Virus record (IMG/VR): IMGVR_UViG_3300033153_015063
Coordinates: 62,001-126,000 of that record
Reading direction: 5' to 3' (one strand)
Length of the DNA stretch: 64,000 nt
Shown piece after piece: positions 1,352 through 59,415 of the stretch (its first letter is position 1; each line of letters begins with the position of its first letter). The notes under the pieces were generated by a model, which saw nothing but the letters and a program-made list of their open reading frames with translations, made no database searches and was not told the DNA's origin. The position numbers and the translations under genes were made by a program.

Positions 1352-1407
1352 ACTTACATCACCTACTACTCGCTTTGTAGCCGATTATATAATAGTTACT
1401 GCCCGTT

Positions 1408-1424: not shown

Positions 1425-1425
1425 T

Positions 1426-32300: not shown

Positions 32301-32729
32301 ATCTCTCCAGAGGACTGTTCGTTCTTATGGGAGTTTGGTGACGACAGAACGGCAAATGTCAAGGGCCCGAGTCACATCTGGTTATGGCTTGGGGAGTTCC
32401 AGATGAACATCACCGTGACCTGCGACCTGGACGAGGAGAAGAAGGTTGTCAACGTGACTATCGTTGAATCTGCACCTGGTCCTGCTGGCAAGGCCGAGGT
32501 GGTGTCAAAGATGGAATATCCGTTGACATACTTCCTTGTGCCGTTCCTCGTGTTATTCGGTCTCGGACTGTTTGTGTTCCAGGCCCCGACGTTGGTAGAT
32601 AACCAGAAGTACGTCATGGCCGTTATGTTGGGCATCATAGCGATAATGATGTTCGAGTTCTTCGGCATCACCAGCTACTCTGTCAACTTTGGGGCGATCT
32701 ACTCTGGCATGGGAGTTACACCGAGGTGA
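29337..32729 (+). CDS. surface protein with PKD domains and 17 thrombospondin type 3 repeats
   Basis: 17 units of DNCP..PNP.Q.D.D.DG.GD.CD; N-terminal anchor; two C-terminal TM helices. Confidence 0.9.
30380..32216 (+). repeat. 17 x 108-bp coding repeat (thrombospondin type 3)
   Basis: counted DNC motifs; units 1 and 4 share about 80 identical bp. Confidence 0.85.
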
Positions 32730-33277: not shown

Positions 33278-34081
33278 TTACCTCTTCTGTTTGTAATCTG
33301 TGAAGTATTTACTCAAAGGCCACGGGACGCCACGGCCATGGCTGCTGTAAAGTATGTCCTGGGCAGCGTTGATACTCTTTGCCCCGGCGTTGTACTTCTT
33401 CACAGCCTTTCCAACGATGGGTTTGAGGCGTTTCAGCTCCTCGATGTCTCTGGCATCAAGCCAAAGACCATAGTTGTAAGAGTTTTCATCATGGTAGCTA
33501 CCAGGGTCCCTCCGTTCTTTGGCGAAAGCTCTGTGATGGTCATAAGCACCCCTGGTCAACCCTTCAGGCGTCATCACCTCTTGAGAGTCATAGGCGATGA
33601 AGAAACGAGCTGCCCTGTCGTCCCAGTCCCAATCGCTTGCATACCCATGCCCTTTTGGTCTCTGCCCATAAACATTGAGATAGGTCATCCCGGCGATACG
33701 TTCCTTTTGGACCTTGTACTTCCCAGGATATTTTTCATCGAGATGCTTCTGGAACGAGGTCTCCATACGCCTACTCGGAGCTTTTCCCTGATACTTGGGT
33801 AGGTGTGTGTCAGCCTCTTTCAAAAGTAGGATACCCTCTTCTTTTTCTTTGATGGATTGGTCGATGGACTTCTTTATCTCCCGGGTATCCAACTTCTCAA
33901 TGGCATCGTAGTTCTTGGAGTGTTCTGGTCTTGGTGTTATCTCTCCAACCATAGCCGCCATGAACTCTCCCTCCGTCAACTGAGGACTGTCTCCCACAGG
34001 TCCCTTGTAGACCGTAGATCCCTCTTCATATTCATAGCGGTATCTATTCCCTGAACCCTCAGGTATCTCTACGGTGGTCAT
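33278..34081 (-). CDS. leader-module protein
   Basis: MTTVEIPEGSGNRYRYEYEEGSTVYKGPVG; upstream 40 bp identical to that of gene 23763. Confidence 0.85.
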   Translation of the reverse strand: MTTVEIPEGSGNRYRYEYEEGSTVYKGPVGDSPQLTEGEFMAAMVGEITPRPEHSKNYDAIEKLDTREIKKSIDQSIKEKEEGILLLKEADTHLPKYQGKAPSRRMETSFQKHLDEKYPGKYKVQKERIAGMTYLNVYGQRPKGHGYASDWDWDDRAARFFIAYDSQEVMTPEGLTRGAYDHHRAFAKERRDPGSYHDENSYNYGLWLDARDIEELKRLKPIVGKAVKKYNAGAKSINAAQDILYSSHGRGVPWPLSKYFTDYKQKR

Positions 34082-34195
34082 CAAGGAATACAATGGGTGT
34101 TGAGTATATAAAGAGTTCGGGAAGATTCTGCATCTCAAATCGGCCGGTGCTGCTTCTCAAAAGAGTCCTACCCAACTTACCCAGCTACCTCCTTT

Positions 34196-34271
34196 TTACG
34201 CTTTTTACAGTTAACCCAGCCCAAACTATATAAAGACCAAGATGCGGGTAAGAGTTAGGTGATGTATGATG
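34196..34271 (+). promoter_or_regulatory. motif + TATA + UTR + RBS unit, copy 1 of 3
   Basis: 45-bp TATATAAAGACCAAGATGCGGGTAAGAGTTAGGTGATGTATGATG at 34227-34271. Confidence 0.9.
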
Positions 34272-35021
34272 GTTACAAAAGTAAAAATCGGAACGACCTT
34301 TCGCTCTGGACTTGCCGATGGAAACCCTCTCTGGAAGATTATCAAGAAAGTAGGATCTCGGCCGGCGACCTATCTCTGCGATGTCGTGAACGAACCCGTT
34401 GAGTTCAACGGAAAGATGTTTGATAGTGACTTCGCTGGCCACTCAGATACCTTCCTCAAGTCAGCAATCGAGCAGAAGCTCAGGTTCTCCGATGCTATCA
34501 ACCATCTGGTGGCCGAAAAAGAATCATTCTGGGACAGCCAGAAAGTTGGAACCACCTACCACTACCAGAGCTCCCGGGGCCAGTGGATTCGGGGAGTGGT
34601 TGATACCCGTGAGGACGACAAAGGTAGGACTGAGAAGTTCCTGAAGTGGACCAACCTTATCGGAGATTGGCGACATGAACTTCCTCAGGTCCGTGCTGAT
34701 GGTTCAGTCTACAAGGGTTACTATATTGAGAACATCGAGAAGGGAGATGGGAACTGTCCAAGTGAATCCCAACTCTATGAGTGTAACTCCGCCAAGTTCT
34801 CTGACAACCCTACCCAGATGGAACCTATCGACCTGACCATCCCCGAACCATCCGAGGATGAAAAGAAGGAACAAGAGCTCTGGCAGAAGGTCAACAAGGT
34901 CCGGGATCTCTTACAGTCCACCAACGAATCCATCAAGTCTGATGGAAAATCCCCCGAACATCTTCTCGATGAAATCAGGGGCGTCGTGGGTCAAGGTTAC
35001 AGACGCCTCTTCAATTTCTGA
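34266..35021 (+). CDS. phage-type hypothetical protein
   Basis: 251-aa ORF with strong promoter and RBS. Confidence 0.8.
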   Translation: MMVTKVKIGTTFRSGLADGNPLWKIIKKVGSRPATYLCDVVNEPVEFNGKMFDSDFAGHSDTFLKSAIEQKLRFSDAINHLVAEKESFWDSQKVGTTYHYQSSRGQWIRGVVDTREDDKGRTEKFLKWTNLIGDWRHELPQVRADGSVYKGYYIENIEKGDGNCPSESQLYECNSAKFSDNPTQMEPIDLTIPEPSEDEKKEQELWQKVNKVRDLLQSTNESIKSDGKSPEHLLDEIRGVVGQGYRRLFNF

Positions 35022-36416: not shown

Positions 36417-36529
36417 CCATAAAAGGGAGTATTTAACCATAGGGGGAAAAAAGATACCCCCCTGTACCATGCTGTAATGAAGCCATCTGCAGTATATAAA
36501 GACTATAGAGATTGAGGCTGGAAATATAT
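36417..36529 (+). repeat. 113-bp inverted repeat, left copy
   Basis: exact reverse complement of 51888-52000. Confidence 0.9.
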
Positions 36530-36953: not shown

Positions 36954-38123
36954 GTGACACACCTGAAGGAGATTCCGAAGGGCAGCGGAAACCTTTACAT
37001 CTACGGTTATAACTCAGGAAAGAAGAGTGATGAATACATAGGGGTCTACTCCAGGGAAAAATGGGTTGAGTTAGCCCTGATGGAGAAGCTACAGAAGAGT
37101 GTCCAGGAACTCAGAGAAATCGAAGGTAGTCGTAGTGAAGATGAACGGGAGGAGGATGAAAGTGAGTTGAACAATGACCTCATCTACCCAGACGACCCAC
37201 GTATCAGAGAGTGGCTCATCGACCCATCCAAACTCGACGTAGTCGGTGTAGACCTCGATCTCAAATCGGTCCGAGATGAAATAATAAGACTCAAAAAGGA
37301 TAGTAAAAGTCTCGAAAGGGAAATAGGTGAGATGGAAAAAATTGGTGTTGAGAAAGAACGTTACGAAAATCTACTCTGGCGTAAAAAGGCAAAGGACCTG
37401 GAATTGAGACAAGCCATTTTCATCGAAAAATTCCCAAACACTACATCTTTCATAGTTTTCAATCCAGAACATATGAAGAACGTCATAAACGGAAAATACA
37501 ACTATGTCCTTCAAATAGGAAAAGAAGTTGATGGTTTTTCTGACCTTGGGATTCCACCACGACACATCTACGACATAGGTATCAACTACTTCAATGGTTC
37601 TCAGGAGAATTATGGGGCAGCTGGATCGTATCAGAGAAAAAATGAACATCACTTGCATGGTCAGTTGACCATACCTTACTATAAAAACAAACGAAAAAAG
37701 GGTCCAACTGAAGATGATAAACATACCATAATCCATGAAGTGGGTCATCACGTCCATACATCTACACTCCTTGGTCACAAAAAATTAAAAAAGTATTACA
37801 CCAAGTGGAACGAAGAGATGCATAAAATATCACTGACAATGCCACCAGCCGGAACCATGTCCAGGGTCCAGGCATATGGGAGTGACCCGCACGAAACGTT
37901 CGCCGAGAGATACGCAACCTATATCGACGGTAAGATGATAACAAATAAACAGATATTAAATAAACAAGTTACAACACTAAAAAGTAAAACTAAATTAACT
38001 AAAAAAGAGAAGAAAGAGATAGAGATATTGGAGGATGAGATAACCGCATCTAAAACGATACTAGATTTTTTCTCTGAAACGTTTAAAGCTATCGAACAAG
38101 TAGACCTCAACAGGAGAGAATGA
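36954..38123 (+). CDS. divergent leader fused to a zincin-like metallopeptidase
   Basis: EIPKGSGNLYIY; IIHEVGHHVH followed by ETFAE. Confidence 0.8.
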   Translation: MTHLKEIPKGSGNLYIYGYNSGKKSDEYIGVYSREKWVELALMEKLQKSVQELREIEGSRSEDEREEDESELNNDLIYPDDPRIREWLIDPSKLDVVGVDLDLKSVRDEIIRLKKDSKSLEREIGEMEKIGVEKERYENLLWRKKAKDLELRQAIFIEKFPNTTSFIVFNPEHMKNVINGKYNYVLQIGKEVDGFSDLGIPPRHIYDIGINYFNGSQENYGAAGSYQRKNEHHLHGQLTIPYYKNKRKKGPTEDDKHTIIHEVGHHVHTSTLLGHKKLKKYYTKWNEEMHKISLTMPPAGTMSRVQAYGSDPHETFAERYATYIDGKMITNKQILNKQVTTLKSKTKLTKKEKKEIEILEDEITASKTILDFFSETFKAIEQVDLNRRE

Positions 38124-39080: not shown

Positions 39081-39689
39081 ATGAGTAAAAAGTGGTTATC
39101 AAATATTCCACCTGGGTCACCGAACTGGTACATATATGGTTCTCCAGATGAAGATGAAATGTGTGGCACAGGTTACTATGGACGTGCCACACTCGATAAT
39201 CTACAGGAATATAAACTCCAATTATTCTGGGAAAGAAAAGTGCAAAACATGGAACATAATGCTAGAGTAATTTTATCTACAGAACAACTATTCAACATCA
39301 AGTCAAGAGCATTAGGAAAAGTTTTAAAGAAAAGGGTGTCTGTAGATTCATTAAAACTGAATACTATCAATCTCAAAGTAGGAAGAGATATCATCAACAT
39401 CCAGTTCGGAGGTAGCCCGGTTTTCGAGAAAAGTGATGGGGTATGGAGAGTTGGTGTGGATGCAACGACTCCGATGATGAGAGGAAAGCAAATCTACATC
39501 ACCTACGATGAGACCTTCTACACCCATCTTGATAGAAGGGAAAGGCATCACATCGCTGCATCCATGAACGATGCCATGAAAAAAAGGGGATTCAGAATCG
39601 GAAACGTTGTGGATGAGTTCGAACGTAGTATCGGATTCGAGGATAAACTTATCAATCAAGATGAGATAGACGACGTTGCAGTCGTGTAG
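39081..39689 (+). CDS. protein with a divergent leader-like N-terminus
   Basis: NIPPGSPNWYIYG...YYGR. Confidence 0.75.
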   Translation: MSKKWLSNIPPGSPNWYIYGSPDEDEMCGTGYYGRATLDNLQEYKLQLFWERKVQNMEHNARVILSTEQLFNIKSRALGKVLKKRVSVDSLKLNTINLKVGRDIINIQFGGSPVFEKSDGVWRVGVDATTPMMRGKQIYITYDETFYTHLDRRERHHIAASMNDAMKKRGFRIGNVVDEFERSIGFEDKLINQDEIDDVAVV

Positions 39690-41427: not shown

Positions 41428-41880
41428 TCAGATCCAGTACTCTTCCTCCTCATCTGCCTTGCGTTCCTCTTCTTCCTTCTCCTTTATCCTTCTGTCCCAC
41501 TCTTCTTCTGTGAGTGGTGACGCTTTGTGACACTTCTGGATGAACTCTTCAGATACCATCCACATCTCTTCAGCATAGTGGATCTTACATTGTGGACAAA
41601 AAGATGTTGCCACACCACCAGAACATTGTGGGCAGAGTGGGATAAGATACTCCTCGATGCCGTTGAACCTGAAATCATTCCCATGTAACATCCGGTGCCT
41701 CTTGTCAAGCTCTGCGGTGGTAAATTTCTCCCACTCTTCTGGGTTTTTATCCTGTAGCAGTTTGACGATCCAACAGGCACTCACCTCTCTCTCCATGTTT
41801 CCAAAGGATGCAAAAAAGTGTTTTTTTGTGTCGATATCCATTGGTTTGATAGTCTCTTCGGGATCATCTATGTCATCCAT
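41428..41880 (-). CDS. hypothetical zinc-ribbon protein
   Basis: CPQC...CPQCKIH. Confidence 0.7.
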   Translation of the reverse strand: MDDIDDPEETIKPMDIDTKKHFFASFGNMEREVSACWIVKLLQDKNPEEWEKFTTAELDKRHRMLHGNDFRFNGIEEYLIPLCPQCSGGVATSFCPQCKIHYAEEMWMVSEEFIQKCHKASPLTEEEWDRRIKEKEEEERKADEEEEYWI

Positions 41881-41968
41881 ACATTCGAAAAGGTAGGTAC
41901 GAGTTTAAAAAGATAAATGAAAAAGATGGGCCGAGAAAAATCAAGGGGGGCCCAGACTTCTCGACCCA

Positions 41969-42044
41969 AGGCGGGTAGCGGATTCGAACCGCTGTGGTCT
42001 CTACAGGTGATGTATGATATGAGACACACCTCCATCGACCCACC
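41969..42044 (-). ncRNA. 76-nt tRNA-like RNA lacking a D-stem, with an anti-RBS loop
   Basis: acceptor GGTGGGT/ACCCGCC; stem GTCTC/GAGAC around loop ATATCATACATCACCTGTA; T arm AGCGG-TTCGAAT-CCGCT. Confidence 0.7.
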
Positions 42045-42340
42045 ATTTGACCAGAGGACCTTATAGATCCAATCCCCTGGTCCCCCGGAGGACAATCCAA
42101 AGATGACCATCCGGGTCCTTCGTAGTTCAGTATATCCTGCTTCGGTTCACCCCCATCTGATGGTGGGTATTTCACTCTCAGCAGTCCCCCGGTCCAGGGT
42201 GTATCAAACTTCCCAAGGGGGGCACCCAGCGGGCAATCCTGTGAAGGGTTCGCCAGGTGGATACTCTCAAACTCCGTGTGTGTTGTTGTTGTTGTTATTT
42301 CAGTTGCTGGCTACTTTTGTAACCACCTCCGTTGAAAGTG
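42045..42340 (-). ncRNA. putative structured RNA co-transcribed upstream of the tRNA-like element
   Basis: hairpins GACCAGGGGA/TCCTCTGGTC, CCCGGA/TCCGGG and CTGCT/AGCAG; motif at 42377-42393 and TTTAAGAA box at 42362; no convincing CDS. Confidence 0.45.
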
Positions 42341-42406
42341 AATATATGTGGGAGTTCTTAAAGATTTCTGGAGTTCAACCGTAAAAAGCGTAATGATACT
42401 CGGAAC

Positions 42407-42949
42407 CTATATCCTTCGCCCAATGGACTGAACATGCCTATCACGGGTTTTGCCGACTATCGGGGTTCCAACCACGTAAAAGCTATCAGGGTACTTTGCC
42501 AGGTCTCTGGTCACCCATTCGTTCCCACCCATCGAAAGGCCATACTTATAGATGGCCGATCTGACACGTTTTGATTGTTGACGAAAACCCTTACCAACCC
42601 TGAAACCAAGTTTGAGAAGTTCATCTCCATCGAGTGTGTAGTAGTTCTTATATGCTTCTGGGTCCTTCAACCGGAATTTTACTACATTTTCGGTGACCTC
42701 GGCCTTCAGGAAATACCCTTCAGGCAAAGGGACGTTTGATACGAGACCAGGGTTTTCCCTGACCACAGTCGGAGAGAGATTCTTCAGGTCAATCGTTTTG
42801 ATGTCCTTGGTCATAGCCGCCATGAACTCCACTTCTGTCAACTCTGGTTCATTCCCAACTGGACCTCGATAATCATTTTTCTGTGTAGATTGATTATAAG
42901 TGTATCTATAAAGGTTCCTATCTCCTATAACTACAATGAAATCTGACAC
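42407..42949 (-). CDS. leader-module protein, variant form
   Basis: NLYRYTYNQSTQKNDYRGPVGNEPELTEVEFMAAM. Confidence 0.8.
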   Translation of the reverse strand: MSDFIVVIGDRNLYRYTYNQSTQKNDYRGPVGNEPELTEVEFMAAMTKDIKTIDLKNLSPTVVRENPGLVSNVPLPEGYFLKAEVTENVVKFRLKDPEAYKNYYTLDGDELLKLGFRVGKGFRQQSKRVRSAIYKYGLSMGGNEWVTRDLAKYPDSFYVVGTPIVGKTRDRHVQSIGRRI

Positions 42950-43143: not shown

Positions 43144-43641
43144 CTACTTCCCCTTCCTGATGGCTACAGAGAGTGGTTTCCAACCATGACCATCTCTCCA
43201 TTTATTGATTACCACAATGGCTTTTTTCTTCTGTTCATTCGTCATCTTCGAGGTCTGTTCCACAATACCCTTCAATCTCATCGAACGTGCATGTATGGTG
43301 CCCCTGTTAACACCTTCATCCATGTCCTCGTCGAGTTCGATGAGTATGTTTTTGACCTCACGAACATCCGAAAGACCCTTCGGGGCAAAATCTCTGACCT
43401 GCCCAGGTCTACCGAGATAGACATTCTCACCACCTGGTACTACAATCCTCTTCCCTTCGACGTATGTGACACGCCTATCCCTTTCTCTAACACCCACCAC
43501 CTTCATAATCTCCAGGAACTCCCCCTCGTCCAGGGCTGGTGCTTCTCCTACAGGCCCCTTGTACTGAGTTTGTTGTGTGGCCTGGTCATAGACATACCTG
43601 TATTTATTCCCTGAACCTGGAGGGATTTCAACTATGGACAT
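43144..43641 (-). CDS. leader-module protein
   Basis: MSIVEIPPGSGNKYRYVYDQATQQTQYKGPVG. Confidence 0.85.
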   Translation of the reverse strand: MSIVEIPPGSGNKYRYVYDQATQQTQYKGPVGEAPALDEGEFLEIMKVVGVRERDRRVTYVEGKRIVVPGGENVYLGRPGQVRDFAPKGLSDVREVKNILIELDEDMDEGVNRGTIHARSMRLKGIVEQTSKMTNEQKKKAIVVINKWRDGHGWKPLSVAIRKGK

Positions 43642-43702
43642 TACAGACACCTAGGATGATTATGGATGAGCTGAGGAGTATATAAATGTCCCGTTAACTT
43701 AT

Positions 43703-44402: not shown

Positions 44403-44612
44403 TTATTTCTTATCTGGAGAATGAGATACATTCTCCCTGAACAACCATTCTCCATCCCAACCAAAATCGACCCAGTAATCATCACATCCTTCACAGTAGT
44501 AGATGTATTCACCTACGTTATCACCGATTGGTTTTCCCTCTTCGTTAACTGGATGCCAGTGACAACAAGTACACAGACCACAACCACCAGGGCACCCCTC
44601 ACTATCACTCAT
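44403..44612 (-). CDS. small Cys-rich protein
   Basis: ATGA coupling to the leader gene; 7 Cys. Confidence 0.6.
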   Translation of the reverse strand: MSDSEGCPGGCGLCTCCHWHPVNEEGKPIGDNVGEYIYYCEGCDDYWVDFGWDGEWLFRENVSHSPDKK

Positions 44613-45112
44613 CGTAACCAGGAAGATGGCTCAGGATTTTCCCACTTATCCTTAACCTTCTCTACCAATTCATCATCTCTTTTCTGGACCAACTCAGATA
44701 CCTTCATCCCTTTCTCGGTCAGTCCGCCCCAATATTCAGCGTAAGAATATTCTTTAAACATAGTTCTGATTTTCCCTCCAGTTAATCTCCACTCCATCAG
44801 ACCTTTTCGTTCCATTACCTTATAGGTGACCATTGGATAAAGGATGTGTTGTCCTCTACTTATATGGAAGTTAGTGTCTGAATCTACATCCCACCCTTTT
44901 CTCCCAAACAGTATAAGAACTTCCTTCTGTGTAGGGGAAAGTTCTTTGTAGATTTCTTCGATTTCTTTATTCTCAGTACCCATCCCCTTCAAGAACTCAG
45001 CCTCTCCCAGCTCAGGAGAATCCCCGACCGGCCCCTTGTACTGTGTCTTGCCGCCTTCATATTCGTAGCGGTATCTATTCCCTGAGCCTGGTGGAATCTC
45101 TACAGTGGTCAT
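44609..45112 (-). CDS. leader-module protein, possible winged-helix cargo
   Basis: MTTVEIPPGSGNRYRYEYEGGKTQYKGPVG; LSPTQKEVL...LTEKG. Confidence 0.85.
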   Translation of the reverse strand: MTTVEIPPGSGNRYRYEYEGGKTQYKGPVGDSPELGEAEFLKGMGTENKEIEEIYKELSPTQKEVLILFGRKGWDVDSDTNFHISRGQHILYPMVTYKVMERKGLMEWRLTGGKIRTMFKEYSYAEYWGGLTEKGMKVSELVQKRDDELVEKVKDKWENPEPSSWLR

Positions 45113-45651: not shown

Positions 45652-46224
45652 CTACTCCTCGGCCTCGAAATCCTCTTCCTCAAGGTCAGCAAGTCGATCC
45701 TCTATCTCCTCTAATCTATTGTCAATAGCATTATCCTCTTTTTTCAGTTGCAGGACCTTTCTTTTCAGGTCTGTGACATGCGTCCTATTCTCAGCAGCAT
45801 TGTCACTCACAGATTCTATTTCAAATTCTATGATGCTGAATGCTTTGTTCTGTTCGTTGTCGATGACTATAATAGCGTCGACAACGTTCTCTATCTTCTC
45901 CTGGTCGGTTTGGGTTTCCTCTATGTCGTCTTCTATCTCTTCGAGTTGATTGACGACCCGGCCGGCAGCATCTTTGAAACCCCCTACACCCTCCAATACT
46001 TTCGGCCTCGGTGGATCAAAATCTCTCCAGTCATCGACCCACTCCACAAAATCTCCGACCCCGACAACTACATCATCGTCAATTCCCATCATCTCCAGGA
46101 ACTCCTCCTCATCCAGGGCTGGTGCATTGCCGACCGGCCCCTTGTAGACCGTAGCCTTGGTCTCAGCATCATAGACGTATTTGTATCTGTTACCGCTTCC
46201 AGGAGGGATTTCGACTATGGACAT
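45652..46224 (-). CDS. leader-module protein with acidic coiled-coil cargo
   Basis: MSIVEIPPGSGNRYKYVYDAETKATVYKGPVG. Confidence 0.85.
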   Translation of the reverse strand: MSIVEIPPGSGNRYKYVYDAETKATVYKGPVGNAPALDEEEFLEMMGIDDDVVVGVGDFVEWVDDWRDFDPPRPKVLEGVGGFKDAAGRVVNQLEEIEDDIEETQTDQEKIENVVDAIIVIDNEQNKAFSIIEFEIESVSDNAAENRTHVTDLKRKVLQLKKEDNAIDNRLEEIEDRLADLEEEDFEAEE

Positions 46225-46280: not shown

Positions 46281-46688
46281 CTAAAACTCCACTTGAAGCT
46301 CGTTGTAATAGTCCCGAGGGCTTTTCGGGGAACGGCCGGCAATCAAATCACTGTTGAATAAATCGACCATATCACCGATAGTATCAGCAGCCCTATTTAA
46401 ATAATCTTCACAATCTGTATCACAATCTATAGGTAAATCTAACTGTTTTAACTGTTCAGATGTTATATAGTCATTGATATATGCATTATCGTCCTCTGCA
46501 AATTGTGAAAAGAAATATGTTAATCCAGACATCTGATAATGGTTCACCGTATTCCTGAACATCTCCAGGAACTCCCCCTCGCTCATCTCAGGAGAATCCC
46601 CGACCGGCCCCTTGTAGACCGTAGCTCCCTCTTCATATTCATAGCGGTATCTGTTACCTGAGCCAGGAGGGATCTCGACAATGGTCAT
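46281..46688 (-). CDS. leader-module protein with AT-rich cargo
   Basis: MTIVEIPPGSGNRYRYEYEEGATVYKGPVG. Confidence 0.85.
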   Translation of the reverse strand: MTIVEIPPGSGNRYRYEYEEGATVYKGPVGDSPEMSEGEFLEMFRNTVNHYQMSGLTYFFSQFAEDDNAYINDYITSEQLKQLDLPIDCDTDCEDYLNRAADTIGDMVDLFNSDLIAGRSPKSPRDYYNELQVEF

Positions 46689-46824
46689 CAAGGAATAGAA
46701 GGGGTGGTGGGTATAAAAATGTGATGGTGGGGTGTGGTGGGTGCCCCGGTTCCTTCATTTCTATCTTCCATTTTCCATCACTACTCAATTTTTTCATTTA
46801 ACTTACAACTAATTATATGAATGG

Positions 46825-47859: not shown

Positions 47860-48678
47860 TCATTCATTAATTTTACTTCCATCACCTTCAATATACAGTG
47901 CTATTCTACTATAGTTCCTGTCAAGTACTGCACGAACACCACCAGCTCTCCATCCCTTCTTTCGTCTGGTAACTATTCCCATTTTCTCCAACTCAGAGGC
48001 TATCTCTGATGCGTTCAGACCCTTTTCATCCAGTTCCCTGATGATAACGATGACTGTCTGTTCATCTTCTCTCTCAATCAATCTGGTGTTTTCTTTTTTG
48101 AGAACACCGCCACCCTTGTCGACTACATCGGATTTGACTTTGTAGCCATATGGTGCCTGCCCCACCCACTCTCCTGAACGCTGTTTTTGTTTGACACCTC
48201 GACGGGTATGCTGAGAAATCTTCATCCTCTCGTACTCTGCCATGTTGACCAGTTGCACGAACACAGAACGCCCCTCGGCTGTCCAAAGATCCAGGAATCT
48301 TACGGACTTGATAACCAACCTGACGCCGTATTTCCTGAGCTCATCCAGCATCCATAGGGCTTCCTTCACATCCCTCCCGAAACGATCCTCTTTTGCCACC
48401 GCAACGATGTCAAAAGCACGTTCCCTGGCGTCCGCAAGGAGTTGCTGGATCGCTTCTCTCTTCTCGATAGATGAACCCGTTTCCTCATCAGAGTAGGTCC
48501 TGGTCCATCTCCACCCACTTTCCTCATCGCACCATTCCTTGATTTCCTTCTCCTGGGCAGGTAGTGAGAAACGCCCTGAGATGAGTTTGTCGGACTTGCG
48601 AATGTATGCGACCACGATGAAACTCGGGCCGTCTTGTTCAAGCTTTGCGGTTGACAACTGAAATTTTGTACTGGGCAA
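47860..48678 (-). CDS. serine recombinase (resolvase domain plus recombinase-type C-terminus)
   Basis: AYIRKS catalytic motif; YSDEETGS...R; DRFGR; GQAPYGY. Confidence 0.9.
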   Translation of the reverse strand: MPSTKFQLSTAKLEQDGPSFIVVAYIRKSDKLISGRFSLPAQEKEIKEWCDEESGWRWTRTYSDEETGSSIEKREAIQQLLADARERAFDIVAVAKEDRFGRDVKEALWMLDELRKYGVRLVIKSVRFLDLWTAEGRSVFVQLVNMAEYERMKISQHTRRGVKQKQRSGEWVGQAPYGYKVKSDVVDKGGGVLKKENTRLIEREDEQTVIVIIRELDEKGLNASEIASELEKMGIVTRRKKGWRAGGVRAVLDRNYSRIALYIEGDGSKINE

Positions 48679-49282: not shown

Positions 49283-50233
49283 ATGTCAGAAACACGTAAA
49301 CGAGTGGCGATGTATATCAGGGTCTCAATCGACGAACAATCCAGGGATGGATACGATGTCAAGTCCCAGGTCAGAAATCTTCGCAATTATATTGCTATGA
49401 AAGAAGGGTGGATTGAAGGTTGGGAATATAGTGATGATGGTTACGATTGTGATGAGAAAAGGCCGGCTTATGAACGGTTGTGGGATGAAATAGATGAATG
49501 GGATGTTCTTCTCATCTGGAAGTTGGACCGTATCCACAATGACATGCCAGGTTTACTGAACATGGGCATCAAACTGGCAGACAACGACAAGGACCTGGCG
49601 TCAGTCAGTGAACTTATCGACACCACTTCTGACATGGGCCGTCATCTCTATCACATCTTCGGAGCTCTGATCCAATTCGAGAACAAAAACCCACGTTCTG
49701 TCTCTCTACCCCATCCTACTTTCATTGATGATGGAGTAGTGGCCGATAGTCAAGAAGTGGAAGTTCCTACCCCTGAAACAGGAACGCCGGTAGCTACGCT
49801 TACAGGTAAGTGGATAACATCTCCACCATTTGGTTATGATATTGACAAAGAACCAGAGTCAAAGGGCCACCTGGTCGTGAACGAGGAAGAAAGTAATGTT
49901 GTTAGATACATCTTCTATCTACGGTTCAAGTTAGAGAACCCCGACTTATTCAAACCATATCAGTGGGATAGTAAGAGAGCCGGCCTCAATGTCCCATACT
50001 ACCGCACCTACCAGGACATCGCAGACCTACTCCACGACAAAGGTATCAGAACAAAGAAGGGAAAGCGATGGACTCCTTGTGCCATCAGAAGGGTCTGTGT
50101 TAACCCCATCTACTGGGGTATATTCAGGTACGGGAGTGAAGAAATGTTGGGTGGACATGAACAATTAACCCCCGAACCAGGTACTGCGGCGATGGGTGAG
50201 TGGGATTGGAAACCGCCCGATGGAGAAGAGTAA
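49283..50233 (+). CDS. serine recombinase
   Basis: MYIRVSIDEQ; RPAY; WKLDRI; PPFGY; IA..L...GI.T..G..W; NPIYWG. Confidence 0.9.
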   Translation: MSETRKRVAMYIRVSIDEQSRDGYDVKSQVRNLRNYIAMKEGWIEGWEYSDDGYDCDEKRPAYERLWDEIDEWDVLLIWKLDRIHNDMPGLLNMGIKLADNDKDLASVSELIDTTSDMGRHLYHIFGALIQFENKNPRSVSLPHPTFIDDGVVADSQEVEVPTPETGTPVATLTGKWITSPPFGYDIDKEPESKGHLVVNEEESNVVRYIFYLRFKLENPDLFKPYQWDSKRAGLNVPYYRTYQDIADLLHDKGIRTKKGKRWTPCAIRRVCVNPIYWGIFRYGSEEMLGGHEQLTPEPGTAAMGEWDWKPPDGEE

Positions 50234-50530: not shown

Positions 50531-50883
50531 TTTACGCTTTTTACAGTTGAACAATCGTAAGACCGTTGTTGTCACAATCGGTCCTATTTCAATAGTTTAA
50601 TATTCTCTGAAGTAGTTGACGCTATCAAGAACGTTGGTGGGAGTATCAGACTGTAACCCTATGATATGTCCAGGGTTTCCAAAACCACACCCGCTACTTT
50701 TCCACCATGGCCGTCAAGCTACCCCAGGCCATCCTTTCCTGGTGGGTTTACCCGGATACGATTGTTAGATATAAACTGTCTCTTATAAAAATGTATCTTG
50801 TTTGCATCAAACGTATTGGTGAGATGTTTATAAAGGAACTGTAAAATATCAGGCATCTTATAAAAGTCCTGTACCATCACGTG

Positions 50884-51042
50884 AGAGCTTTATATACTCA
50901 CAAGTAGGCCAGAGCTTTATATACTCACAAGTAGGCCAGAGCTTTATATACTCACAAGTAGGCCAGAGCTTTATATACTCACAAGTAGGCCAGAGCTTAT
51001 ATACTCACAAGTAGGCCAGAGCTTTATATACTCACAAGTAGG
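50884..51042 (+). repeat. 6 x 27-bp tandem repeat AGAGCTTTATATACTCACAAGTAGGCC
   Basis: units start at 50884, 50911, 50938, 50965, 50992 (one T missing) and 51018 (partial). Confidence 0.95.
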
Positions 51043-51083
51043 TTACGTTCTTTACGGTATTGGCCTAAGATACGTTTCTAATG

Positions 51084-51800
51084 TGTAGTAGTAGTGTAGT
51101 AGTAGTAGGTAGTAGTGTAGTAGTAGTAGGTAGTAGTGTAGTAGTAGTAGGTAGTAGTGTAGTAGTAGTGTAGTAGTGTAGTAGTAGTAGGGTAGGTAGT
51201 AGTGGAATTAAATGTGAAGCACTGTGGATGGGGTAGGTAAGATAGGTAGGTAACGGAATTAAATGTGAGACAGTAGATGCCGTAATAATAGTAATAGTAG
51301 TAATAACTGTAACAGGAAAATTAAATGTTATCAGTCAGTACACAGTTGTTTGGCACTATGGTAACCAAATTAAATGAAATCAGTTCACTCTCAAAAGCGT
51401 AATTTTTGAAATTCTACCATCCCGTACACACGTGTATGGCAAGGAGATAGTTAGTAAGTAGTAGTAGTGGTAGTAGATAGGGTAGATAGGGTAGTAGAAT
51501 TAAATGAAATATGGTAGGTAGTAGTAGGTAGTAGTAGGTAGTAGTAGGTAGTAGTAGTAGGTAGTAGTAGGTAGGTAGGTGGTAGGGTCAGAATTAAATG
51601 AAATAGGGTAGTAGGGGGTAGTAGTAGGGTAGTAGGGGGTAGTAGTAGGTCAGAATTAAATGAAATAGGGTAGTAGGGGGTAGTAGTAGGGTAGTAGGGG
51701 GTAGTAGTAGGGTAGTAGGGGGTAGTAGTAGATAAGGTAGGTAGGGTAGGTGGGTCAGAATTAAATGAAAGTAGGTATGATGTATCAGTAGTGGTAGTAG
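51084..51800 (+). repeat. GTA/GGTA low-complexity tract with 8 AATTAAATG boxes; candidate origin or terminal region
   Basis: + strand is G-rich and C-poor; no ORFs. Confidence 0.8.
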
Positions 51801-51887: not shown

Positions 51888-52000
51888 ATATATTTCCAGC
51901 CTCAATCTCTATAGTCTTTATATACTGCAGATGGCTTCATTACAGCATGGTACAGGGGGGTATCTTTTTTCCCCCTATGGTTAAATACTCCCTTTTATGG
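51888..52000 (-). repeat. 113-bp inverted repeat, right copy
   Basis: exact reverse complement of 36417-36529. Confidence 0.9.
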
Positions 52001-55712: not shown

Positions 55713-55713
55713 C

Positions 55714-55899
55714 TTACTCACTCTCCATGAAGACATCAGGGATAGCCTCGATCATGTCCGTACCATCCTCATTCTGCAACCAGTCGATGGCATACCAAAG
55801 GATTTTCAGCTTCCTCCAGGTGTTCTTGTCATCCTTGTGGACGGTCTGTAGCCGGGCCCTGATTTCACGCTTCGTTTGTGTAAGATTTTTGGACATCAT
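55714..55899 (-). CDS. small protein, first gene of the ArdC-like operon
   Basis: directly after copy 2 of the 45-bp promoter/RBS unit. Confidence 0.75.
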   Translation of the reverse strand: MMSKNLTQTKREIRARLQTVHKDDKNTWRKLKILWYAIDWLQNEDGTDMIEAIPDVFMESE

Positions 55900-55969
55900 A
55901 CATCACCTAACTCTTACCCGCATCTTGGTCTTTATATACTTTCAGGCCAAACAACCGTAAAAAGCGTAA
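55894..55969 (-). promoter_or_regulatory. motif + TATA + UTR + RBS unit, copy 2 of 3
   Basis: 55894-55938 is identical to 34227-34271; motif at 55953-55969. Confidence 0.9.
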
Positions 55970-57727: not shown

Positions 57728-58045
57728 TCATAGTCTGGTTTTTCTGATACTTCGTAGGAAATCCAGACTTTTCCGTGTCAATCGAAAAACTTCCATCTCC
57801 ATCTCTATCAGATACCCATCTACGATAAGTTTTTCGAGGGTAGTAGAGTGGAAGGTTTGACCTTCGGGACGCCAACATTTTTCCCCAAACTCCCACATAA
57901 GTTGTTGGCGGTCAACATCCAACATATAATCTCCAGATAATATATTGTCGATGTGTATTAGATTGATACGATAGATAACGTCGTATAGGATTTTTTCATC
58001 TATATTATCGGATTCAAAAGAATCCAGACTTTCACTTCCTTCCAT
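57728..58045 (-). CDS. small protein, possible winged helix
   Basis: TLEKLIVDGYL...FRLTRKS. Confidence 0.6.
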   Translation of the reverse strand: MEGSESLDSFESDNIDEKILYDVIYRINLIHIDNILSGDYMLDVDRQQLMWEFGEKCWRPEGQTFHSTTLEKLIVDGYLIEMEMEVFRLTRKSLDFLRSIRKTRL

Positions 58046-59345
58046 TTTTCAGGACCTTCACGTAGTTGACAATGGTCTCCTTATTTCCGTTGTAGCTGTT
58101 CTGCTTCTTGACCTTGGCAGAGATGGTAACGATTGTTCCTTCCTGGATGTTGTCCCGATTCTCATTGGCGAACCACTTGACGGATCGACCAGTGGGGTTA
58201 TCATCGTCATCGACCTCGTCCATGATATGAAGCGTCCAGGCACCATACCCACTCTGGCCCGACCTGTGTGCCTTGACATGGACCCGCACACTGACCTTAT
58301 CACCTTCTTTTCCGAGGAATCCATTGGCTGTGTTGGTGGGTGTCTTCGAGGCAAGGCTCTGGGCGTTCTCACGGGTGTAGGCGGAAACGATGCTGGCCAC
58401 GATACCGAGAGACCTCCGGGTGAGGGCGATGGATTTTGAAGCCGCATTCATGTTCCTTTCGTAGTCCGACATGGGTTTCAGGGCCCGGCGGGCCCAGTCA
58501 AGGGCATCGGCAGCGAGTTTCTGGTCGGCGTCGGTGGGATTCCACCGTTTCCATTCACTCTTGGTCATGGTCTCGGGGGGGTCGAAAAGGCGGAGTGCGA
58601 TATTGGCCGTTGAGTGGACACCATCCTCCTCTGCCTTCCATTTCGGCATCCAGCCGCCGATACGGATGCAGACAGCGACAGCGGTCAGATAGTCTTTGGT
58701 GTCAATCTCCCAGTAATCGTGGCTATACTCACCCATGTCATCAATGGACCGCATGACCACGTTGATGGTCTTCTGATAGTTGGCGAGGGTCTTGGGGTCG
58801 ATGCCACCGAGATAATCTCGGACGCACTTCGATCCAACCTGCTTGTAGACGCCGGTGTCCTCTTCGAGAACCACGTAGGTGATCTTCCGGGCGGATCTAC
58901 CTGCCTTCTTGGTCCCACAGTGGTCACACATAAACCGACCCCGGAACGTCTCGGGGATGACCTCGCCAGGCACAGAGTAGAACACCTCGGTACCCTTTTT
59001 ATCCTCGGTCTTGAGTTTCTCGATGGACCCGATGAGCTGGAACCCCTCGATATGGGGTGCCTCACCGGTTATTCGAACAATGGCCCACTGGCAGAGTTCT
59101 GCGTAATAATTGCTGGGCTTTCCGTTCACCCTGATGGGACACACCTGGTCCTTGGCCTTTCCCCTGAAGTCCTTTTCCGTCCACTTTTCGATGAGTGTCA
59201 TGGTGGGCTCAGGGAATCCGTACTTCAGGGCCTTCTTTGCCTGCTGCCCGATTTTCTTCTCCAGGGTCTCCAGATTATACTGGGGGATGAGGAAGAGTTC
59301 AGGGTCCTTCCCAACAAGTGTTTCGGCGGTTTCATAATCCATCAT
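58032..59345 (-). CDS. phage-type protein with a zinc motif and a C-terminal OB-fold-like region
   Basis: CDHC...QVGSKCVRDYLG; ISAKVKKQNSYNGNKETIV. Confidence 0.8.
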   Translation of the reverse strand: MMDYETAETLVGKDPELFLIPQYNLETLEKKIGQQAKKALKYGFPEPTMTLIEKWTEKDFRGKAKDQVCPIRVNGKPSNYYAELCQWAIVRITGEAPHIEGFQLIGSIEKLKTEDKKGTEVFYSVPGEVIPETFRGRFMCDHCGTKKAGRSARKITYVVLEEDTGVYKQVGSKCVRDYLGGIDPKTLANYQKTINVVMRSIDDMGEYSHDYWEIDTKDYLTAVAVCIRIGGWMPKWKAEEDGVHSTANIALRLFDPPETMTKSEWKRWNPTDADQKLAADALDWARRALKPMSDYERNMNAASKSIALTRRSLGIVASIVSAYTRENAQSLASKTPTNTANGFLGKEGDKVSVRVHVKAHRSGQSGYGAWTLHIMDEVDDDDNPTGRSVKWFANENRDNIQEGTIVTISAKVKKQNSYNGNKETIVNYVKVLKNGRK

Positions 59346-59415
59346 ACATCACCTAACTCTTACCCGCATCTTGGTCTTTATATAGTTTTGGCTGGGTTAA
59401 CTGTAAAAAGCGTAA
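59340..59415 (-). promoter_or_regulatory. motif + TATA + UTR + RBS unit, copy 3 of 3
   Basis: one mismatch to 34196-34271. Confidence 0.9.

What the first reader, a model, noticed from the sequence alone, without database searches (positions are those of the whole stretch)
41969..42044. tRNA-shaped RNA displaying an antisense loop to the RBS and start codon of three genes
Seen: on the minus strand, 76 nt fold into a 7-bp acceptor stem, a stemless 12-nt D region, a GUCUC/GAGAC stem and a perfect T arm. Its 19-nt loop contains AUCAUACAUCACCU, the exact complement of AGGUGAUGUAUGAU at 34257-34270, 55895-55908 and 59341-59354, extendable by G:U pairs; 10 nt also match the RBS of gene 1351. On the + strand the same bases give only ATG-ATA-TGA, so this is not a real gene start. 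The loop also mimics the 16S anti-Shine-Dalgarno (AUCACCU). Inference: a tRNA scaffold, processed and stabilised by host enzymes, presents an antisense guide that shuts off or tunes early operons, including the ArdC-like one. Caveat: 14-nt matches occur by chance in 64 kb; the case rests on position.
Basis: partly seen in the sequence, partly recalled or inferred. Interest (0 to 1): 0.88.

Follow-up and report, generated by a model that had tools for sequence, protein, structure and literature searches.

The report
tRNA-shaped antisense RNA, archaeal-type virus
A large, otherwise unknown virus-like contig with archaeal-type promoters carries a small tRNA-shaped RNA gene whose enlarged loop is a perfect 14-16-base complement to the very start (ribosome-binding site plus start codon) of a family of the virus's own messages, so it probably acts as a built-in translation brake, although nothing yet shows that the RNA is made.

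Summary
At 41969-42044 (-) there is a 7-bp acceptor stem, a 12-nt D region without a stem, a GUCUC/GAGAC stem with a 19-nt loop, and a perfect T arm. The loop complements AGGTGATGTATGAT at 34257, 55895 and 59341.

Corrections:
- The three targets are copies of one promoter-leader cassette, not independent hits.
- The 242.6-kb source contig has six perfect sites. Two of them pair over 16 nt.
- ARAGORN and Rfam do not call the element a tRNA.
- The contig looks archaeal: BRE/TATA promoters, many leaderless genes and intron-bearing tRNAs.

The match is not chance. In 20,000 loop shuffles, 1 reached 14 nt and none reached 16 nt.

The element ends a separate non-coding unit. That unit has a promoter of the same class as its targets, about 290 nt of structured RNA, the tRNA-like element and three T5 tracts. 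Complementarity starts where the target mRNAs are predicted to start.

Best reading (about 0.45): a trans-acting antisense RNA on a tRNA scaffold that blocks translation initiation for a gene class.

No relatives exist in any collection searched, so covariation is untestable and expression is unknown. The "ArdC-like" and "early" labels are unsupported. The closest known analogue is the tRNA-like, RNase P-processed C4 antisense RNA of phages P1/P7.

The parts
42377..42393 (-). Upstream promoter element TTACGCTTTTTACGGTT of the ncRNA unit. It belongs to the same class as the elements in front of the target genes.
   Evidence: There are 33-34 instances of this element in the source contig, each followed after 14 nt by a TATA box.
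42355..42362 (-). TATA-like box TTTAAGAA, weaker than the class consensus TATATAAA. The predicted transcript start is about 42332.
   Evidence: register of the class. The start position is inferred from the 20-23-nt TATA-to-ATG spacing of the leaderless genes of the class.
42312..42332 (-). Predicted 5' end of the ncRNA, ACGGAGGUG-GUUACAAAAGUA. Positions 42312-42325 are a sense copy of 34270-34283, the codons that follow the start of target gene 34266. Relative to the 34266 start region, the 9 nt ATGTATGAT that hold both ATGs are absent. What remains is an 8-codon GTG mini-ORF.
42045..42311 (-). About 270 nt of non-coding RNA upstream of the tRNA-like element. It holds a CAA/CA-rich tract (~42276-42299) and two strong hairpins (42084-42115 and 42049-42082).
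   Evidence: the 221-nt region folds with z = -3.75; the codon-usage score is non-coding; no gene is called here.
41969..42044 (-). tRNA-shaped element, in order along the minus strand:
- acceptor 5' strand 42044-42038
- D region 42037-42026
- stem 42025-42021 / 42001-41997
- loop 42020-42002
- CAC 41996-41994
- T arm 41993-41977
- acceptor 3' strand 41976-41970
- discriminator U 41969
42003..42018 (-). Antisense core of the loop, AUCAUACAUCACCUGU. It pairs over 16 nt with ACAGGUGAUGUAUGAU at two targets outside the window. It pairs over 14 nt (42005-42018) with AGGUGAUGUAUGAU at four targets.
   Evidence: Duplex energies are -23.6 to -27.3 kcal/mol.
41907..41968 (-). 3' end of the unit: a hairpin at 41927-41968, then three T5 tracts (41936-41940, 41920-41924, 41907-41911). 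These are archaeal-type termination signals. The last T tract overlaps the TATA box (TTTTTAAA) of the leaderless downstream gene 41428-41880.
   Evidence: The termination role is inference from established knowledge of oligo-T termination in archaea.
34196..34270 (+). Target cassette 1: promoter element, BRE/TATA, then AGGTGATGTATGATG at the start of gene 34266-35021 (251 aa, no known family).
55895..55969 (-). Target cassette 2, in front of a 61-aa ORF (55714-55899) that overlaps the 357-aa protein 54663-55736. That protein has an HExxH motif and only a faint zincin hit.
59341..59415 (-). Target cassette 3, in front of gene 58032-59345 (437 aa, no known family).
1355..1364 (-). Partial target (10 nt, AGGTGATGTA) behind a promoter of the same class. 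The gene starts at 1351.
   Evidence: duplex energy -16.3 kcal/mol.

Best explanation
The element is the 3'-terminal, tRNA-shaped module of a separate non-coding transcription unit, about 400 nt long, on a large archaeal-type virus or virus-like element.

Proposed steps (all inferred):
1. The unit is transcribed from a promoter of the same class as its targets.
2. The host's tRNA-processing enzymes (RNase P, tRNase Z, CCA-adding enzyme) recognise the intact acceptor/T-arm half. They release and stabilise a ~76-79-nt RNA.
3. Its 19-nt loop, held on an extended 'anticodon' arm, base-pairs with the first 14-16 nt of a class of viral mRNAs. That stretch holds the 5'-terminal Shine-Dalgarno AGGUGAU, a GU spacer and AUGAU.
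4. Pairing competes with the 16S rRNA 3' end and with start-codon recognition. It may also expose the duplex to a double-strand-specific RNase.
5. The result is lowered translation of 6 perfectly matched genes and about 7 partly matched ones.

Shown: the sequence, the fold options, the non-random complementarity, the non-coding nature of the region, the shared promoter class, and the T tracts. Inferred: transcription, processing, the mRNA 5' ends, pairing in vivo, and the direction of the effect.
For: 1. Complementarity. It is perfect over 14 nt at 34257, 55895 and 59341 and at one further site in the contig, and over 16 nt at two more sites. Shuffled loops reach >=14 nt in 1 of 20,000 and >=16 nt in 0 of 20,000. 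No other tRNA, tRNA-like element or tRNA intron of the contig has a >=14-nt complement at a gene start.
2. Target motif. The motif is conserved even where the TATA-to-start spacer has diverged: GACCAAGATGCGGGTAAGAGTT versus GGCTGATTGTTAGTAAGAGGCAAC. The two one-mismatch variants (A10G) still pair through G:U.
3. Register. In both cassette subfamilies the complementarity begins at nt 23 after TATATAAA, although the SD is shifted by 2 nt between them. That is the position where at least 10 leaderless genes of the same promoter class have the A of ATG.
4. A unit of its own. It has a class promoter at 42393-42355 and non-coding codon usage (-0.05, versus 0.12-0.33 for genes). JGI called no gene there. 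Three T5 tracts follow it, and the downstream gene has its own TATA box.
5. Scaffold. All three stems are fully paired, the T loop is the consensus UUCGAAU, and GG is retained in the D region. With acceptor and T arm enforced, the fold is within 0.2 kcal/mol of the MFE. The surrounding 221 nt are strongly structured (z = -3.75).
6. Precedents. The C4 antisense RNA of P1/P7 is tRNA-like and RNase P-processed (PMC3858429, PMC8546580). tRNA scaffolds stabilise inserted RNAs (PMC3753655). Antisense control of an early transcript is known in archaeal virus phiH1 (cited in PMC8707807).
Against: - There are no expression data and no relatives, so neither a discrete RNA nor loop/target covariation can be shown.
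- The predicted ensemble partly sequesters the anti-SD part of the loop. CACCU pairs with AGGUG of the D region, or UACA pairs with UGUA.
- The locus also holds a sense copy of the neighbouring 14 nt of gene 34266. Sequence has therefore moved between these loci, and the loop match could be a by-product of that.
- The contig holds several other odd tRNA-like genes with inserts, so an enlarged loop is not unusual here.
- The mRNA 5' ends are inferred, not mapped.
Confidence: 0.45

Rival explanations
1. It is a degenerate or unusual tRNA gene with a lost D arm and an anticodon loop enlarged by a 12-nt insertion. The insert was copied from a cassette start region by recombination. The element has no regulatory role, or at most some tRNA-related role.
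For: - The contig carries many non-standard tRNA genes: introns of 5-92 nt and odd elements at 15551-15688 and L162 6150-6860.
- ARAGORN at a lowered threshold can read it as tRNA-Asp(AUC) with a 12-nt intron.
- The loop contains U-CAU-AC, like a Met/Ile anticodon loop.
- A sense copy of the adjacent 14 nt of gene 34266 lies in the same intergenic region, which shows sequence exchange.
Against: - After removal of 12 nt only 64 nt remain, with no real D arm. An A34 anticodon (AUC) is not used in archaea (established knowledge).
- No bulge-helix-bulge motif can be drawn around the putative intron (direct inspection).
- All stems and the T loop are intact, which does not fit decay.
- The inserted sequence is exactly the conserved block, in antisense, centred in the loop.
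- The element sits ~290 nt into a unit with its own promoter and terminators, unlike the contig's tRNA genes.
Confidence: 0.2
2. The tRNA-like module is mainly a 3'-end processing and stabilising signal for the ~290-nt upstream RNA, and the upstream RNA is the functional product. This resembles MALAT1/mascRNA or tRNA punctuation. The loop match would then be secondary.
For: The element lies at the 3' end of a long structured leader with two strong hairpins and a CA-rich tract. The acceptor/T-arm half is the part that is conserved in shape.
Against: The upstream part has no significant complementarity or similarity to anything else in 225 kb of the contig, apart from the sense 14-mer. It has no Rfam match. 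This rival does not explain a 16-nt anti-start sequence in the loop.
Confidence: 0.1
3. It is a Y-RNA-like partner of the Ro60 (TROVE) protein that the same contig encodes. Bacterial and phage YrlA RNAs carry a tRNA-like module.
For: The contig encodes a 550-aa TROVE + vWA_Ro60 protein. [quoted passage not shown]
Against: - The Ro60 gene is ~70 kb away, whereas known Y RNAs are encoded next to it (PMC4201824).
- No Y_RNA or YrlA hit appears in Rfam even at E<=10.
- The topology differs. Here the RNA ends are in the acceptor stem, not in a Ro60-binding stem, and no such stem is evident.
- Better candidates sit right beside the Ro60 gene.
Confidence: 0.08
4. The 14-16-mer is a DNA-level signal (initiator or operator of the promoter class). 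Its inverted copy inside the ncRNA gene would then be another protein-binding site, not an RNA guide.
For: The motif lies at a fixed distance from the TATA box in all cassettes and is conserved where the spacer is not.
Against: In the ncRNA gene it lies ~325 nt from the promoter, inverted, with no TATA box at the proper distance on the + strand. It is placed exactly in the loop between two perfectly paired arms.
Confidence: 0.07
5. It is an attachment site (attP): a tRNA-like fragment matching a host tRNA gene, as in halovirus HF2.
For: A low-scoring tRNA-like gene was interpreted as attP in HF2 (PMC8707807). Two serine recombinases lie 6-8 kb away.
Against: - No tyrosine integrase is adjacent. 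The recombinases are small resolvase/invertase-type proteins.
- The T-arm + acceptor 21-mer is absent from 185,579 species genomes, except for one irrelevant Micromonospora fragment.
- The element has both acceptor strands and its own promoter and terminator.
Confidence: 0.03
6. The region is protein-coding: a 100-aa ORF at 41873-42175(-), inside a 146-codon open frame.
For: The open frame is unusually long for an intergenic region.
Against: The codon-usage score is -0.05 to -0.08, below every real gene tested (0.12-0.33). JGI did not call it. It has no ATG start, and the region holds strong RNA structure and a tRNA-like fold.
Confidence: 0.02

Closest known systems
[quoted passage not shown]
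   Same: It is a phage-encoded regulatory RNA of about 77 nt with a tRNA-like fold and short D/T loops. RNase P cuts it from a precursor, and it represses synthesis of phage proteins in trans by base pairing (PMC3858429; PMC8546580 and the titles it cites).
   Different: C4 is bacterial. From my own knowledge, it is encoded in the same operon upstream of its targets and uses two short loops. Here the RNA is a separate unit, the host is archaeal-type, a single 19-nt loop carries the whole 14-16-nt guide, and the target is a multi-gene class. There is no Rfam C4 match.
Engineered 'tRNA scaffold' for RNA expression (Ponchon and Dardel)
   Same: The acceptor stem and T arm are kept so that cellular enzymes process and protect the RNA. 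The anticodon stem-loop is replaced by the RNA of interest (PMC3753655).
   Different: The scaffold is synthetic and keeps the D arm. The element here is natural and lacks a D stem.
tRNA-like domain of tmRNA
   Same: A 7-bp acceptor stem, a stemless D loop of ~8-12 nt with GG, a long helix in place of the anticodon arm, and a consensus T arm.
   Different: There is no tag reading frame and no pseudoknots. The pair is U3:G70 rather than G3:U70. ARAGORN finds no tmRNA.
YrlA / bacterial and phage Y RNAs bound by Ro60
   Same: They are tRNA mimics that tRNA-processing enzymes recognise (PMC4201824). The contig encodes a Ro60 homologue.
   Different: The element is not adjacent to the Ro60 gene, has a different topology and gives no covariance-model hit.
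Murine gammaherpesvirus 68 TMERs (tRNA-miRNA-encoded RNAs)
   Same: A viral tRNA-like element uses host tRNA processing (tRNase Z) to produce small regulatory RNAs (PMC4838037).
   Different: TMERs are eukaryotic and Pol III/Dicer-dependent. Their guides are separate hairpins downstream of the tRNA-like part, not in its loop.
Antisense RNA Tant of halovirus phiH1, and archaeal trans-acting sRNAs that mask ribosome-binding sites
   Same: Base-pairing control of an archaeal virus's early lytic transcript (as cited in PMC8707807). Masking of SD/AUG by archaeal sRNAs is known in Methanosarcina (my own knowledge).
   Different: Tant is a cis-encoded counter-transcript. None of these RNAs is tRNA-shaped.
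tRNA-like attP gene of halovirus HF2
   Same: A low-scoring, non-canonical tRNA-like gene on an archaeal virus (PMC8707807).
   Different: The HF2 element sits next to an integrase and matches host tRNA genes. Neither holds here.

Membership tests
Canonical tRNA (Rfam RF00005 / ARAGORN) | Cloverleaf with a D stem, recognised by tRNA covariance or heuristic models | tested here: not met
   ARAGORN finds nothing at default settings, with or without introns. There is no Rfam hit at gathering score, and the best tRNA-clan score is 14.2 bits.
Canonical tRNA (Rfam RF00005 / ARAGORN) | 7-nt anticodon loop, or an intron with a bulge-helix-bulge motif whose removal restores one | tested here: not met
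   The loop is 19 nt. The only internal pairing is UACA/UGUA with a single 6-nt bulge, which is not a BHB motif. The ps80 ARAGORN model gives a 64-nt product with anticodon AUC.
Canonical tRNA (Rfam RF00005 / ARAGORN) | 7-bp acceptor stem directly stacked on a 5-bp T stem with a UUCRANY loop | tested here: met
   GGUGGGU/ACCCGCC and AGCGG-UUCGAAU-CCGCU.
P1/P7 C4 antisense RNA | Match to the family's sequence/structure model in Rfam | tested here: not met
   No C4 hit at gathering score or at E<=10.
P1/P7 C4 antisense RNA | tRNA-like fold plus complementarity to the translation start region of phage genes | tested here: met
P1/P7 C4 antisense RNA | Maturation from a precursor by RNase P | not testable with these tools
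   This needs RNA 5'-end mapping or an in vitro cleavage assay.
Y RNA / YrlA | Encoded next to a Ro60 (TROVE) gene | tested here: not met
   The Ro60 gene lies at contig ~172.6-174.2 kb and the element at ~104.0 kb.
Y RNA / YrlA | Ro60-binding stem formed by the RNA's 5' and 3' ends; match to Rfam Y RNA models | tested here: not met
   The RNA ends form the acceptor stem. No Y_RNA or YrlA hit at E<=10.
tmRNA | Tag reading frame, pseudoknots and G3:U70 | tested here: not met
   ARAGORN finds no tmRNA. The arm is closed by a 19-nt loop, and the pair is U3:G70.
attP tRNA fragment | Identity to (part of) a host tRNA gene, and an adjacent integrase | tested here: not met
   Searches give no matching tRNA in 185,579 genomes. 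Only small serine recombinases lie 6-8 kb away. The true host is unknown, so absence is not absolute.
Trans-acting antisense sRNA that masks a ribosome-binding site | Own transcription unit, non-coding, with significant complementarity to SD/start of unlinked genes | tested here: met
   The promoter and terminators are predicted, not mapped.
Trans-acting antisense sRNA that masks a ribosome-binding site | The RNA accumulates, and it represses its targets through pairing | not testable with these tools
   No transcriptome is available for this contig, and no relatives exist for covariation.

The most novel reading that the evidence does not exclude
A 242-kb archaeal-type virus makes a natural 'tRNA-scaffold' guide RNA. 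Host tRNA enzymes would mature the tRNA-shaped RNA. Its enlarged anticodon loop would pair with the 5'-terminal SD-AUG of a whole promoter class of the virus's own mRNAs (6 perfect and about 7 partial targets) and switch their translation off as a block. This would be the first tRNA-shaped trans-antisense regulator in the archaeal world, and an RNA counterpart of phage translational repressors such as T4 RegA.
Probability: 0.4. Interest if true: 0.8.

Novelty: new variant of a known kind. Interest (0 to 1): 0.6.

Why it matters
If it is real, it would show three things.
- Viruses of archaea can reuse the tRNA fold as a carrier for a regulatory guide, with maturation and stability supplied by the host's tRNA machinery. 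So far this is known in nature mainly from the C4 RNA of P1/P7, and it has been reinvented in the laboratory as the 'tRNA scaffold'.
- One small RNA could control a whole class of viral messages through a shared 5'-terminal start region.
- Archaeal mRNAs with a very short leader that carries an SD would then be subject to antisense control.

It is also a practical warning. Standard tRNA finders miss most RNA genes of this contig, including intron-bearing tRNAs and several tRNA-like elements. The contig itself has almost no relatives and encodes gyrase, PolB, an RFC-like clamp loader and Ro60.

Tried and rejected
- **Chance match:** rejected.
- **Second complementary block** (3' acceptor strand and trailer versus GACCAAG..GCGGGUA of the leader). 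It looked good in a whole-duplex test. It is not significant once the 14-mer is set aside: 35% of random genomic 35-mers pair as well. It probably also lies upstream of the mRNA start.
- **Intergenic region as a decayed paralogue of gene 34266:** no protein-level similarity beyond VTKV.
- **Coding ORF:** rejected on codon usage.
- **Bacterial sigma-70 reading of the cassette** (TTTACA-17-TATATA). Dropped in favour of an archaeal BRE/TATA reading, because at least 10 genes of the class have ATG 20-23 nt after the TATA box and the contig has intron-bearing tRNAs.
- **Relatives.** All of these searches came up empty:
  - near matches among phages and plasmids
  - scaffold, leader and TATA+TIR patterns in IMG/VR, which hit only the source contig
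  - the neighbouring 150-aa protein, which is an orphan
  - the 437-aa target protein, whose two distant homologues sit on unrelated high-GC contigs
- **Host tRNA / attP:**
- **A paralogous ncRNA elsewhere in the contig:** none.
- **Anti-start sequences in other tRNAs, introns or tRNA-like elements of the contig:** none.
- **Rfam matches:** SpF41 (22.8 bits, E=0.29) and tRNA-Sec (14 bits) are below any meaningful threshold.
- **One script timed out** and was replaced by a k-mer index.
Full report
**1. What is there**

Read on the minus strand, 42044-41969 is:
- GGUGGGU, the acceptor 5' strand
- CGAUGGAGGUGU, 12 nt with no stem
- GUCUC
- AUAUCAUACAUCACCUGUA, a 19-nt loop
- GAGAC
- CAC
- AGCGG-UUCGAAU-CCGCU, the T arm
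- ACCCGCC
- U, the discriminator

Every stem is fully paired, with one U:G pair in the acceptor. The T loop is the tRNA consensus. The D region keeps GG dinucleotides.

The 14-mer AGGTGATGTATGAT occurs exactly at 34257(+), 55895(-) and 59341(-). It also occurs at 42005(+) as the loop's own complement. The 10-nt match in front of gene 1351 is real.

**2. Is it a tRNA?**

No standard tool says so.
- ARAGORN finds nothing, with or without introns at default settings. At an 80% threshold, where obvious false positives also appear, it offers a 64-nt 'tRNA-Asp(AUC)' with a 12-nt intron and a 3-bp pseudo-D arm.
- Rfam gives no hit at gathering score. The best tRNA-clan score is 14 bits.
- No bulge-helix-bulge motif can be drawn around the extra 12 nt.
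- The unconstrained MFE (-27.5 kcal/mol) pairs loop CACCU with AGGUG of the D region.
- With acceptor and T arm enforced, the best fold is -27.3. It has an 8-nt linker and a long arm, GUG-U-GUCUC[AUAUCA]UACA(UCACC)UGUAGAGACCAC.

'tRNA-shaped' is fair for the acceptor/T-arm half. The rest looks more like the tRNA-like domain of tmRNA, or an engineered tRNA scaffold.

**3. Where the window comes from**

The window is positions 62,001-126,000 of IMG/VR contig IMGVR_UViG_3300033153_015063, which is JGI Ga0366824_1000500 (242,596 bp). Almost all of its proteins are orphans. Walking the contig showed these genes:
- GyrA and GyrB
- a family-B DNA polymerase
- RFC-like clamp-loader proteins
- thymidylate synthase
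- many methyltransferases
- a Ro60 (TROVE) homologue

Several features point to an archaeal host.

(a) The contig has at least 33 copies of a promoter module: TTACGCTTTTTACRGTT, then N10, then GAAA(G/C), then TATATAAAG. This reads as an upstream element plus BRE plus TATA box. At least 10 of these promoters have the ATG 20-23 nt after the TATA box, which means leaderless mRNAs.

(b) The contig has tRNA genes with introns of 5-92 nt that default ARAGORN misses: Thr(GGU) at window 10773-10872, plus Met(CAU), Ser(UGA) and Ser(GGA) elsewhere.

I therefore read promoters and RNA ends in the archaeal frame. This is inference.

**4. The targets are one family, and a larger one than reported**

The three sites are copies of a ~75-nt cassette that runs from the promoter through ATGATG. 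They count as one hit, not three.

Across the contig there are six perfect 14-mers, all behind class promoters. Two of them have a different spacer (...GGCAAC) and match the loop over 16 nt, ACAGGTGATGTATGAT. Two variants carry A10G, which still pairs as G:U. About five more match 10-13 nt.

The motif is conserved even where the 22-24 nt between the TATA box and the motif have diverged. That indicates constraint on the motif itself.

**5. Is the match chance?**

No.
- Shuffles of the loop, tested against the 34 promoter-proximal windows, reach >=14 nt once in 20,000 and never reach >=16 nt.
- A local alignment of the 526-nt intergenic region against the cassette scores 28. Shuffles score 17.1 +/- 2.2, with a maximum of 25 in 500.
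- None of nine other query segments has a >=14-nt complement at a gene start in 225 kb of the contig. These were the 5' part of this ncRNA, four tRNA genes with introns, and four odd tRNA-like elements.

A second complementary block that I noticed (3' acceptor strand versus leader) is not significant and is dropped.

**6. The unit around it**

The 526-nt gap between genes 42407-42949 and 41428-41880 is non-coding. JGI called no gene there. A 146-codon open frame in it has a codon-usage score of -0.05, against 0.12-0.33 for real genes.

The gap begins with a promoter of the same class: 42393-42377, then TTTAAGAA at 42362-42355. The predicted start is ~42332.

The first transcribed bases, ACGGAGGUG-GUUACAAAAGUA, are a copy of the start of target gene 34266 from which the 9 nt holding both ATGs are missing. 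No further protein-level similarity follows.

After that come, in order:
- a CA-rich tract
- two strong hairpins
- the tRNA-like element
- another hairpin
- three T5 tracts (41940-41907)

The 221 nt around the element fold with z = -3.75. The downstream gene has its own TATA box 23 nt before its ATG. So this is a self-contained ncRNA unit of about 400 nt with the tRNA-like module at its 3' end. It is driven by the same promoter class as its putative targets.

**7. A register argument**

In cassette subfamily 1, 22 nt separate TATATAAA from AGGTGATG. In subfamily 2, 22 nt separate it from ACAGGTGATG. In both, complementarity to the loop starts at nt 23, although the SD is shifted by 2 nt between them (direct count). 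Nt 23 is also where the leaderless genes of the class have the A of their ATG.

The simplest reading is that the target mRNAs begin with (AC)AGGUGAUGUAUGAUG and that the loop is complementary to their 5'-terminal 14-16 nt. This fits an RNA-RNA interaction better than a DNA-level coincidence. It remains inference until 5' ends are mapped.

**8. Most likely mechanism (confidence about 0.45)**

The precursor is cut by the host's RNase P and tRNase Z at the acceptor/T-arm module, and CCA is added. The stable ~76-79-nt RNA presents its loop. The loop pairs with SD + GU + AUGAU at the 5' end of 6 perfectly matched mRNAs and about 7 partly matched ones. Predicted duplex energies are -23.6 to -27.3 kcal/mol for the perfect and G:U-variant sites and -16 to -22 for the partial ones. 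Pairing competes with the 16S 3' end, and AUCACCU in the loop is the same sequence as that anti-SD. Translation initiation would be blocked, possibly followed by duplex cleavage.

One target operon continues into gyrB, so the class may hold replication-phase genes. 'Early' is not shown. 'ArdC-like' rests on a zincin hit at E=0.15 and nothing in the PDB.

**9. Rivals**

- (a) An odd or decaying tRNA gene whose loop picked up a cassette fragment (0.2). This fits the contig's many unusual tRNA-like genes and the evidence for sequence exchange. It does not fit the intact stems, the separate promoter and terminators, or the exact antisense placement.
- (b) A 3' processing and stability module for the upstream RNA (0.1).
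- (c) A Y-RNA-like partner of the contig's Ro60 (0.08). Y RNAs of bacteria and phages mimic tRNA and lie next to Ro60 genes (PMC4201824). Here the gene is 70 kb away, the topology differs, and Rfam is silent. Better candidates lie beside the Ro60 gene.
- (d) A DNA-level initiator or operator motif (0.07).
- (e) attP, as in halovirus HF2 (PMC8707807) (0.03). There is no matching tRNA in 185,579 genomes and no adjacent integrase.
- (f) Protein-coding (0.02).

**10. Comparison with what is known**

- **Closest functional and structural analogue:** the C4 antisense RNA of P1/P7. It is a processed 77-base RNA with a tRNA-like structure and short D and T loops. Its precursor is an RNase P substrate, and it represses Ant synthesis in trans (PMC3858429, PMC8546580). 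The element here is not a member of that family: there is no model match, and the host domain, genomic arrangement and guide layout all differ.
- **By architecture:** the engineered tRNA scaffold (PMC3753655) and the tmRNA tRNA-like domain.
- **By strategy:** the herpesviral TMERs (PMC4838037).
- **In archaeal viruses:** antisense control is known for phiH1 (cited in PMC8707807), but not on a tRNA fold.

I rate it a new variant of a known kind, if it is real.

**11. Limits**

Everything rests on one sequence. The covariation test is therefore impossible now. Expression, processing and the mRNA 5' ends are predictions.

Noticed in passing
window 1412-1425(-), 15758(+), 17690(+), 34196(+), 42393(-), 50532(+), 55969(-), 59415(-), and 25 more places on the source contig: A promoter class is present at least 33 times: TTACGCTTTTTACRGTT, N10, GAAA(G/C), TATATAAAG. 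It is followed 20-23 nt later either by ATG (leaderless genes) or by AGGTGAT-type leaders. This looks like an upstream factor-binding site plus BRE/TATA, and it argues for an archaeal host.
   Followed up: partly
window 10773-10872 (-): tRNA-Thr(GGU) with a 28-nt intron. Default ARAGORN and Rfam at gathering score both miss it. The contig has further tRNA genes, several with introns: Met(CAU), Ser(UGA), Ser(GGA), Pro, Ala, Lys and Leu.
   Followed up: partly
window 15551-15688 (+): A second non-canonical tRNA-like gene directly behind a class-variant promoter. It has acceptor GCGGUGG/CCACCGC, a normal D arm, a 7-bp stem with the 8-nt loop CCGUCAUA, a ~55-75-nt extra arm or intron, and a T arm. 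It scores below the Rfam threshold.
   Followed up: partly
L162 8398-10050 (contig ~172.6-174.2 kb) and L162 6150-7040: A 550-aa Ro60/TROVE + vWA homologue lies 1.3-2 kb from a tRNA cluster (Ser, Ala, Lys). The cluster also holds three unclassified tRNA-like elements that share the motif GAGUGCUGUAGAG..ACGGAUACUUCG. One of them (6723-6835, fold z = -3.4) is followed by the hairpin AUCACC-UCCG-GGUGAU, which contains the 16S-like AUCACCUCC. These are candidate viral Y-like RNAs. Rfam has no Y RNA hit.
   Followed up: partly
window 23751-24452, 24549-25646, 33278-34138(-), 43144-43650(-), 44609-45112(-), 45652-46224(-), 46281-46691(-), 59862-60683(-), 61010-61759, 61808-62476, and others: A family of at least 11 paralogous genes shares a ~45-aa N-terminus (M-T-T-V-E-I-P-P-G-S-G-N-R-Y-R-Y-E-Y ... 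T-V-Y-K-G-P-V-G-x-A-P-E-L) in front of unrelated, often acidic C-terminal parts. No Pfam or PHROG family matches. Two more proteins (2835-3656, 39081-39689) start with a looser version of the motif.
   Followed up: no
window 36417-36529 and 51888-52000: A 113-nt perfect inverted repeat, each arm carrying a TATATAAAG promoter. It flanks a 15.4-kb segment that contains the ncRNA unit, both small serine recombinases (47860-48678 -, 49283-50233 +) and the repeat-rich non-coding region. The segment may be invertible.
   Followed up: no
window 50857-51044 and 51074-51792: A gene-free 1.6-kb region holds 7 tandem 27-nt units (AGAGCTTTATATACTCACAAGTAGGCC, each with a TATA-like box) and a long GTAGTAG/GGGGTAGTAG-rich repeat field. 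It could be an origin of replication or a regulatory array.
   Followed up: no
window 42312-42325 (-) versus 34270-34283 (+): TGGTTACAAAAGTA is an exact sense copy of the codons right after the start of target gene 34266. It sits at the predicted 5' end of the ncRNA, just after GGAGGTG. The ncRNA promoter region looks like a copy of that cassette that has lost its two ATGs.
   Followed up: partly
window 41873-42310 (-): A 146-codon frame without stops runs across the ncRNA region, including the tRNA-like element. Its codon usage is non-coding and no gene was called.
   Followed up: yes
window 29337-32729 (+), 6230-15397 (-), 26471-29346 (+): Very large predicted surface-type proteins: 17 thrombospondin type-3 repeats (E=3e-163), PKD, fn3 and CarboxypepD_reg domains, and a 1490-aa orphan. 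These are likely virion or adhesion proteins.
   Followed up: no
window 36954-38123 (+): A faint, sub-threshold Pfam hit (E=0.005, 17 bits against a cut-off of 27.4) to the zincin-type ATLF domain family. It is probably just a metalloprotease-like fold and is too weak to name.
   Followed up: no
window 43616-43689 and 60649-60723: A 71-75-nt repeat, 97-99% identical, covers the 5' end and upstream region of two members of the paralogous family. It contains another TATATAAA promoter on the opposite strand.
   Followed up: no
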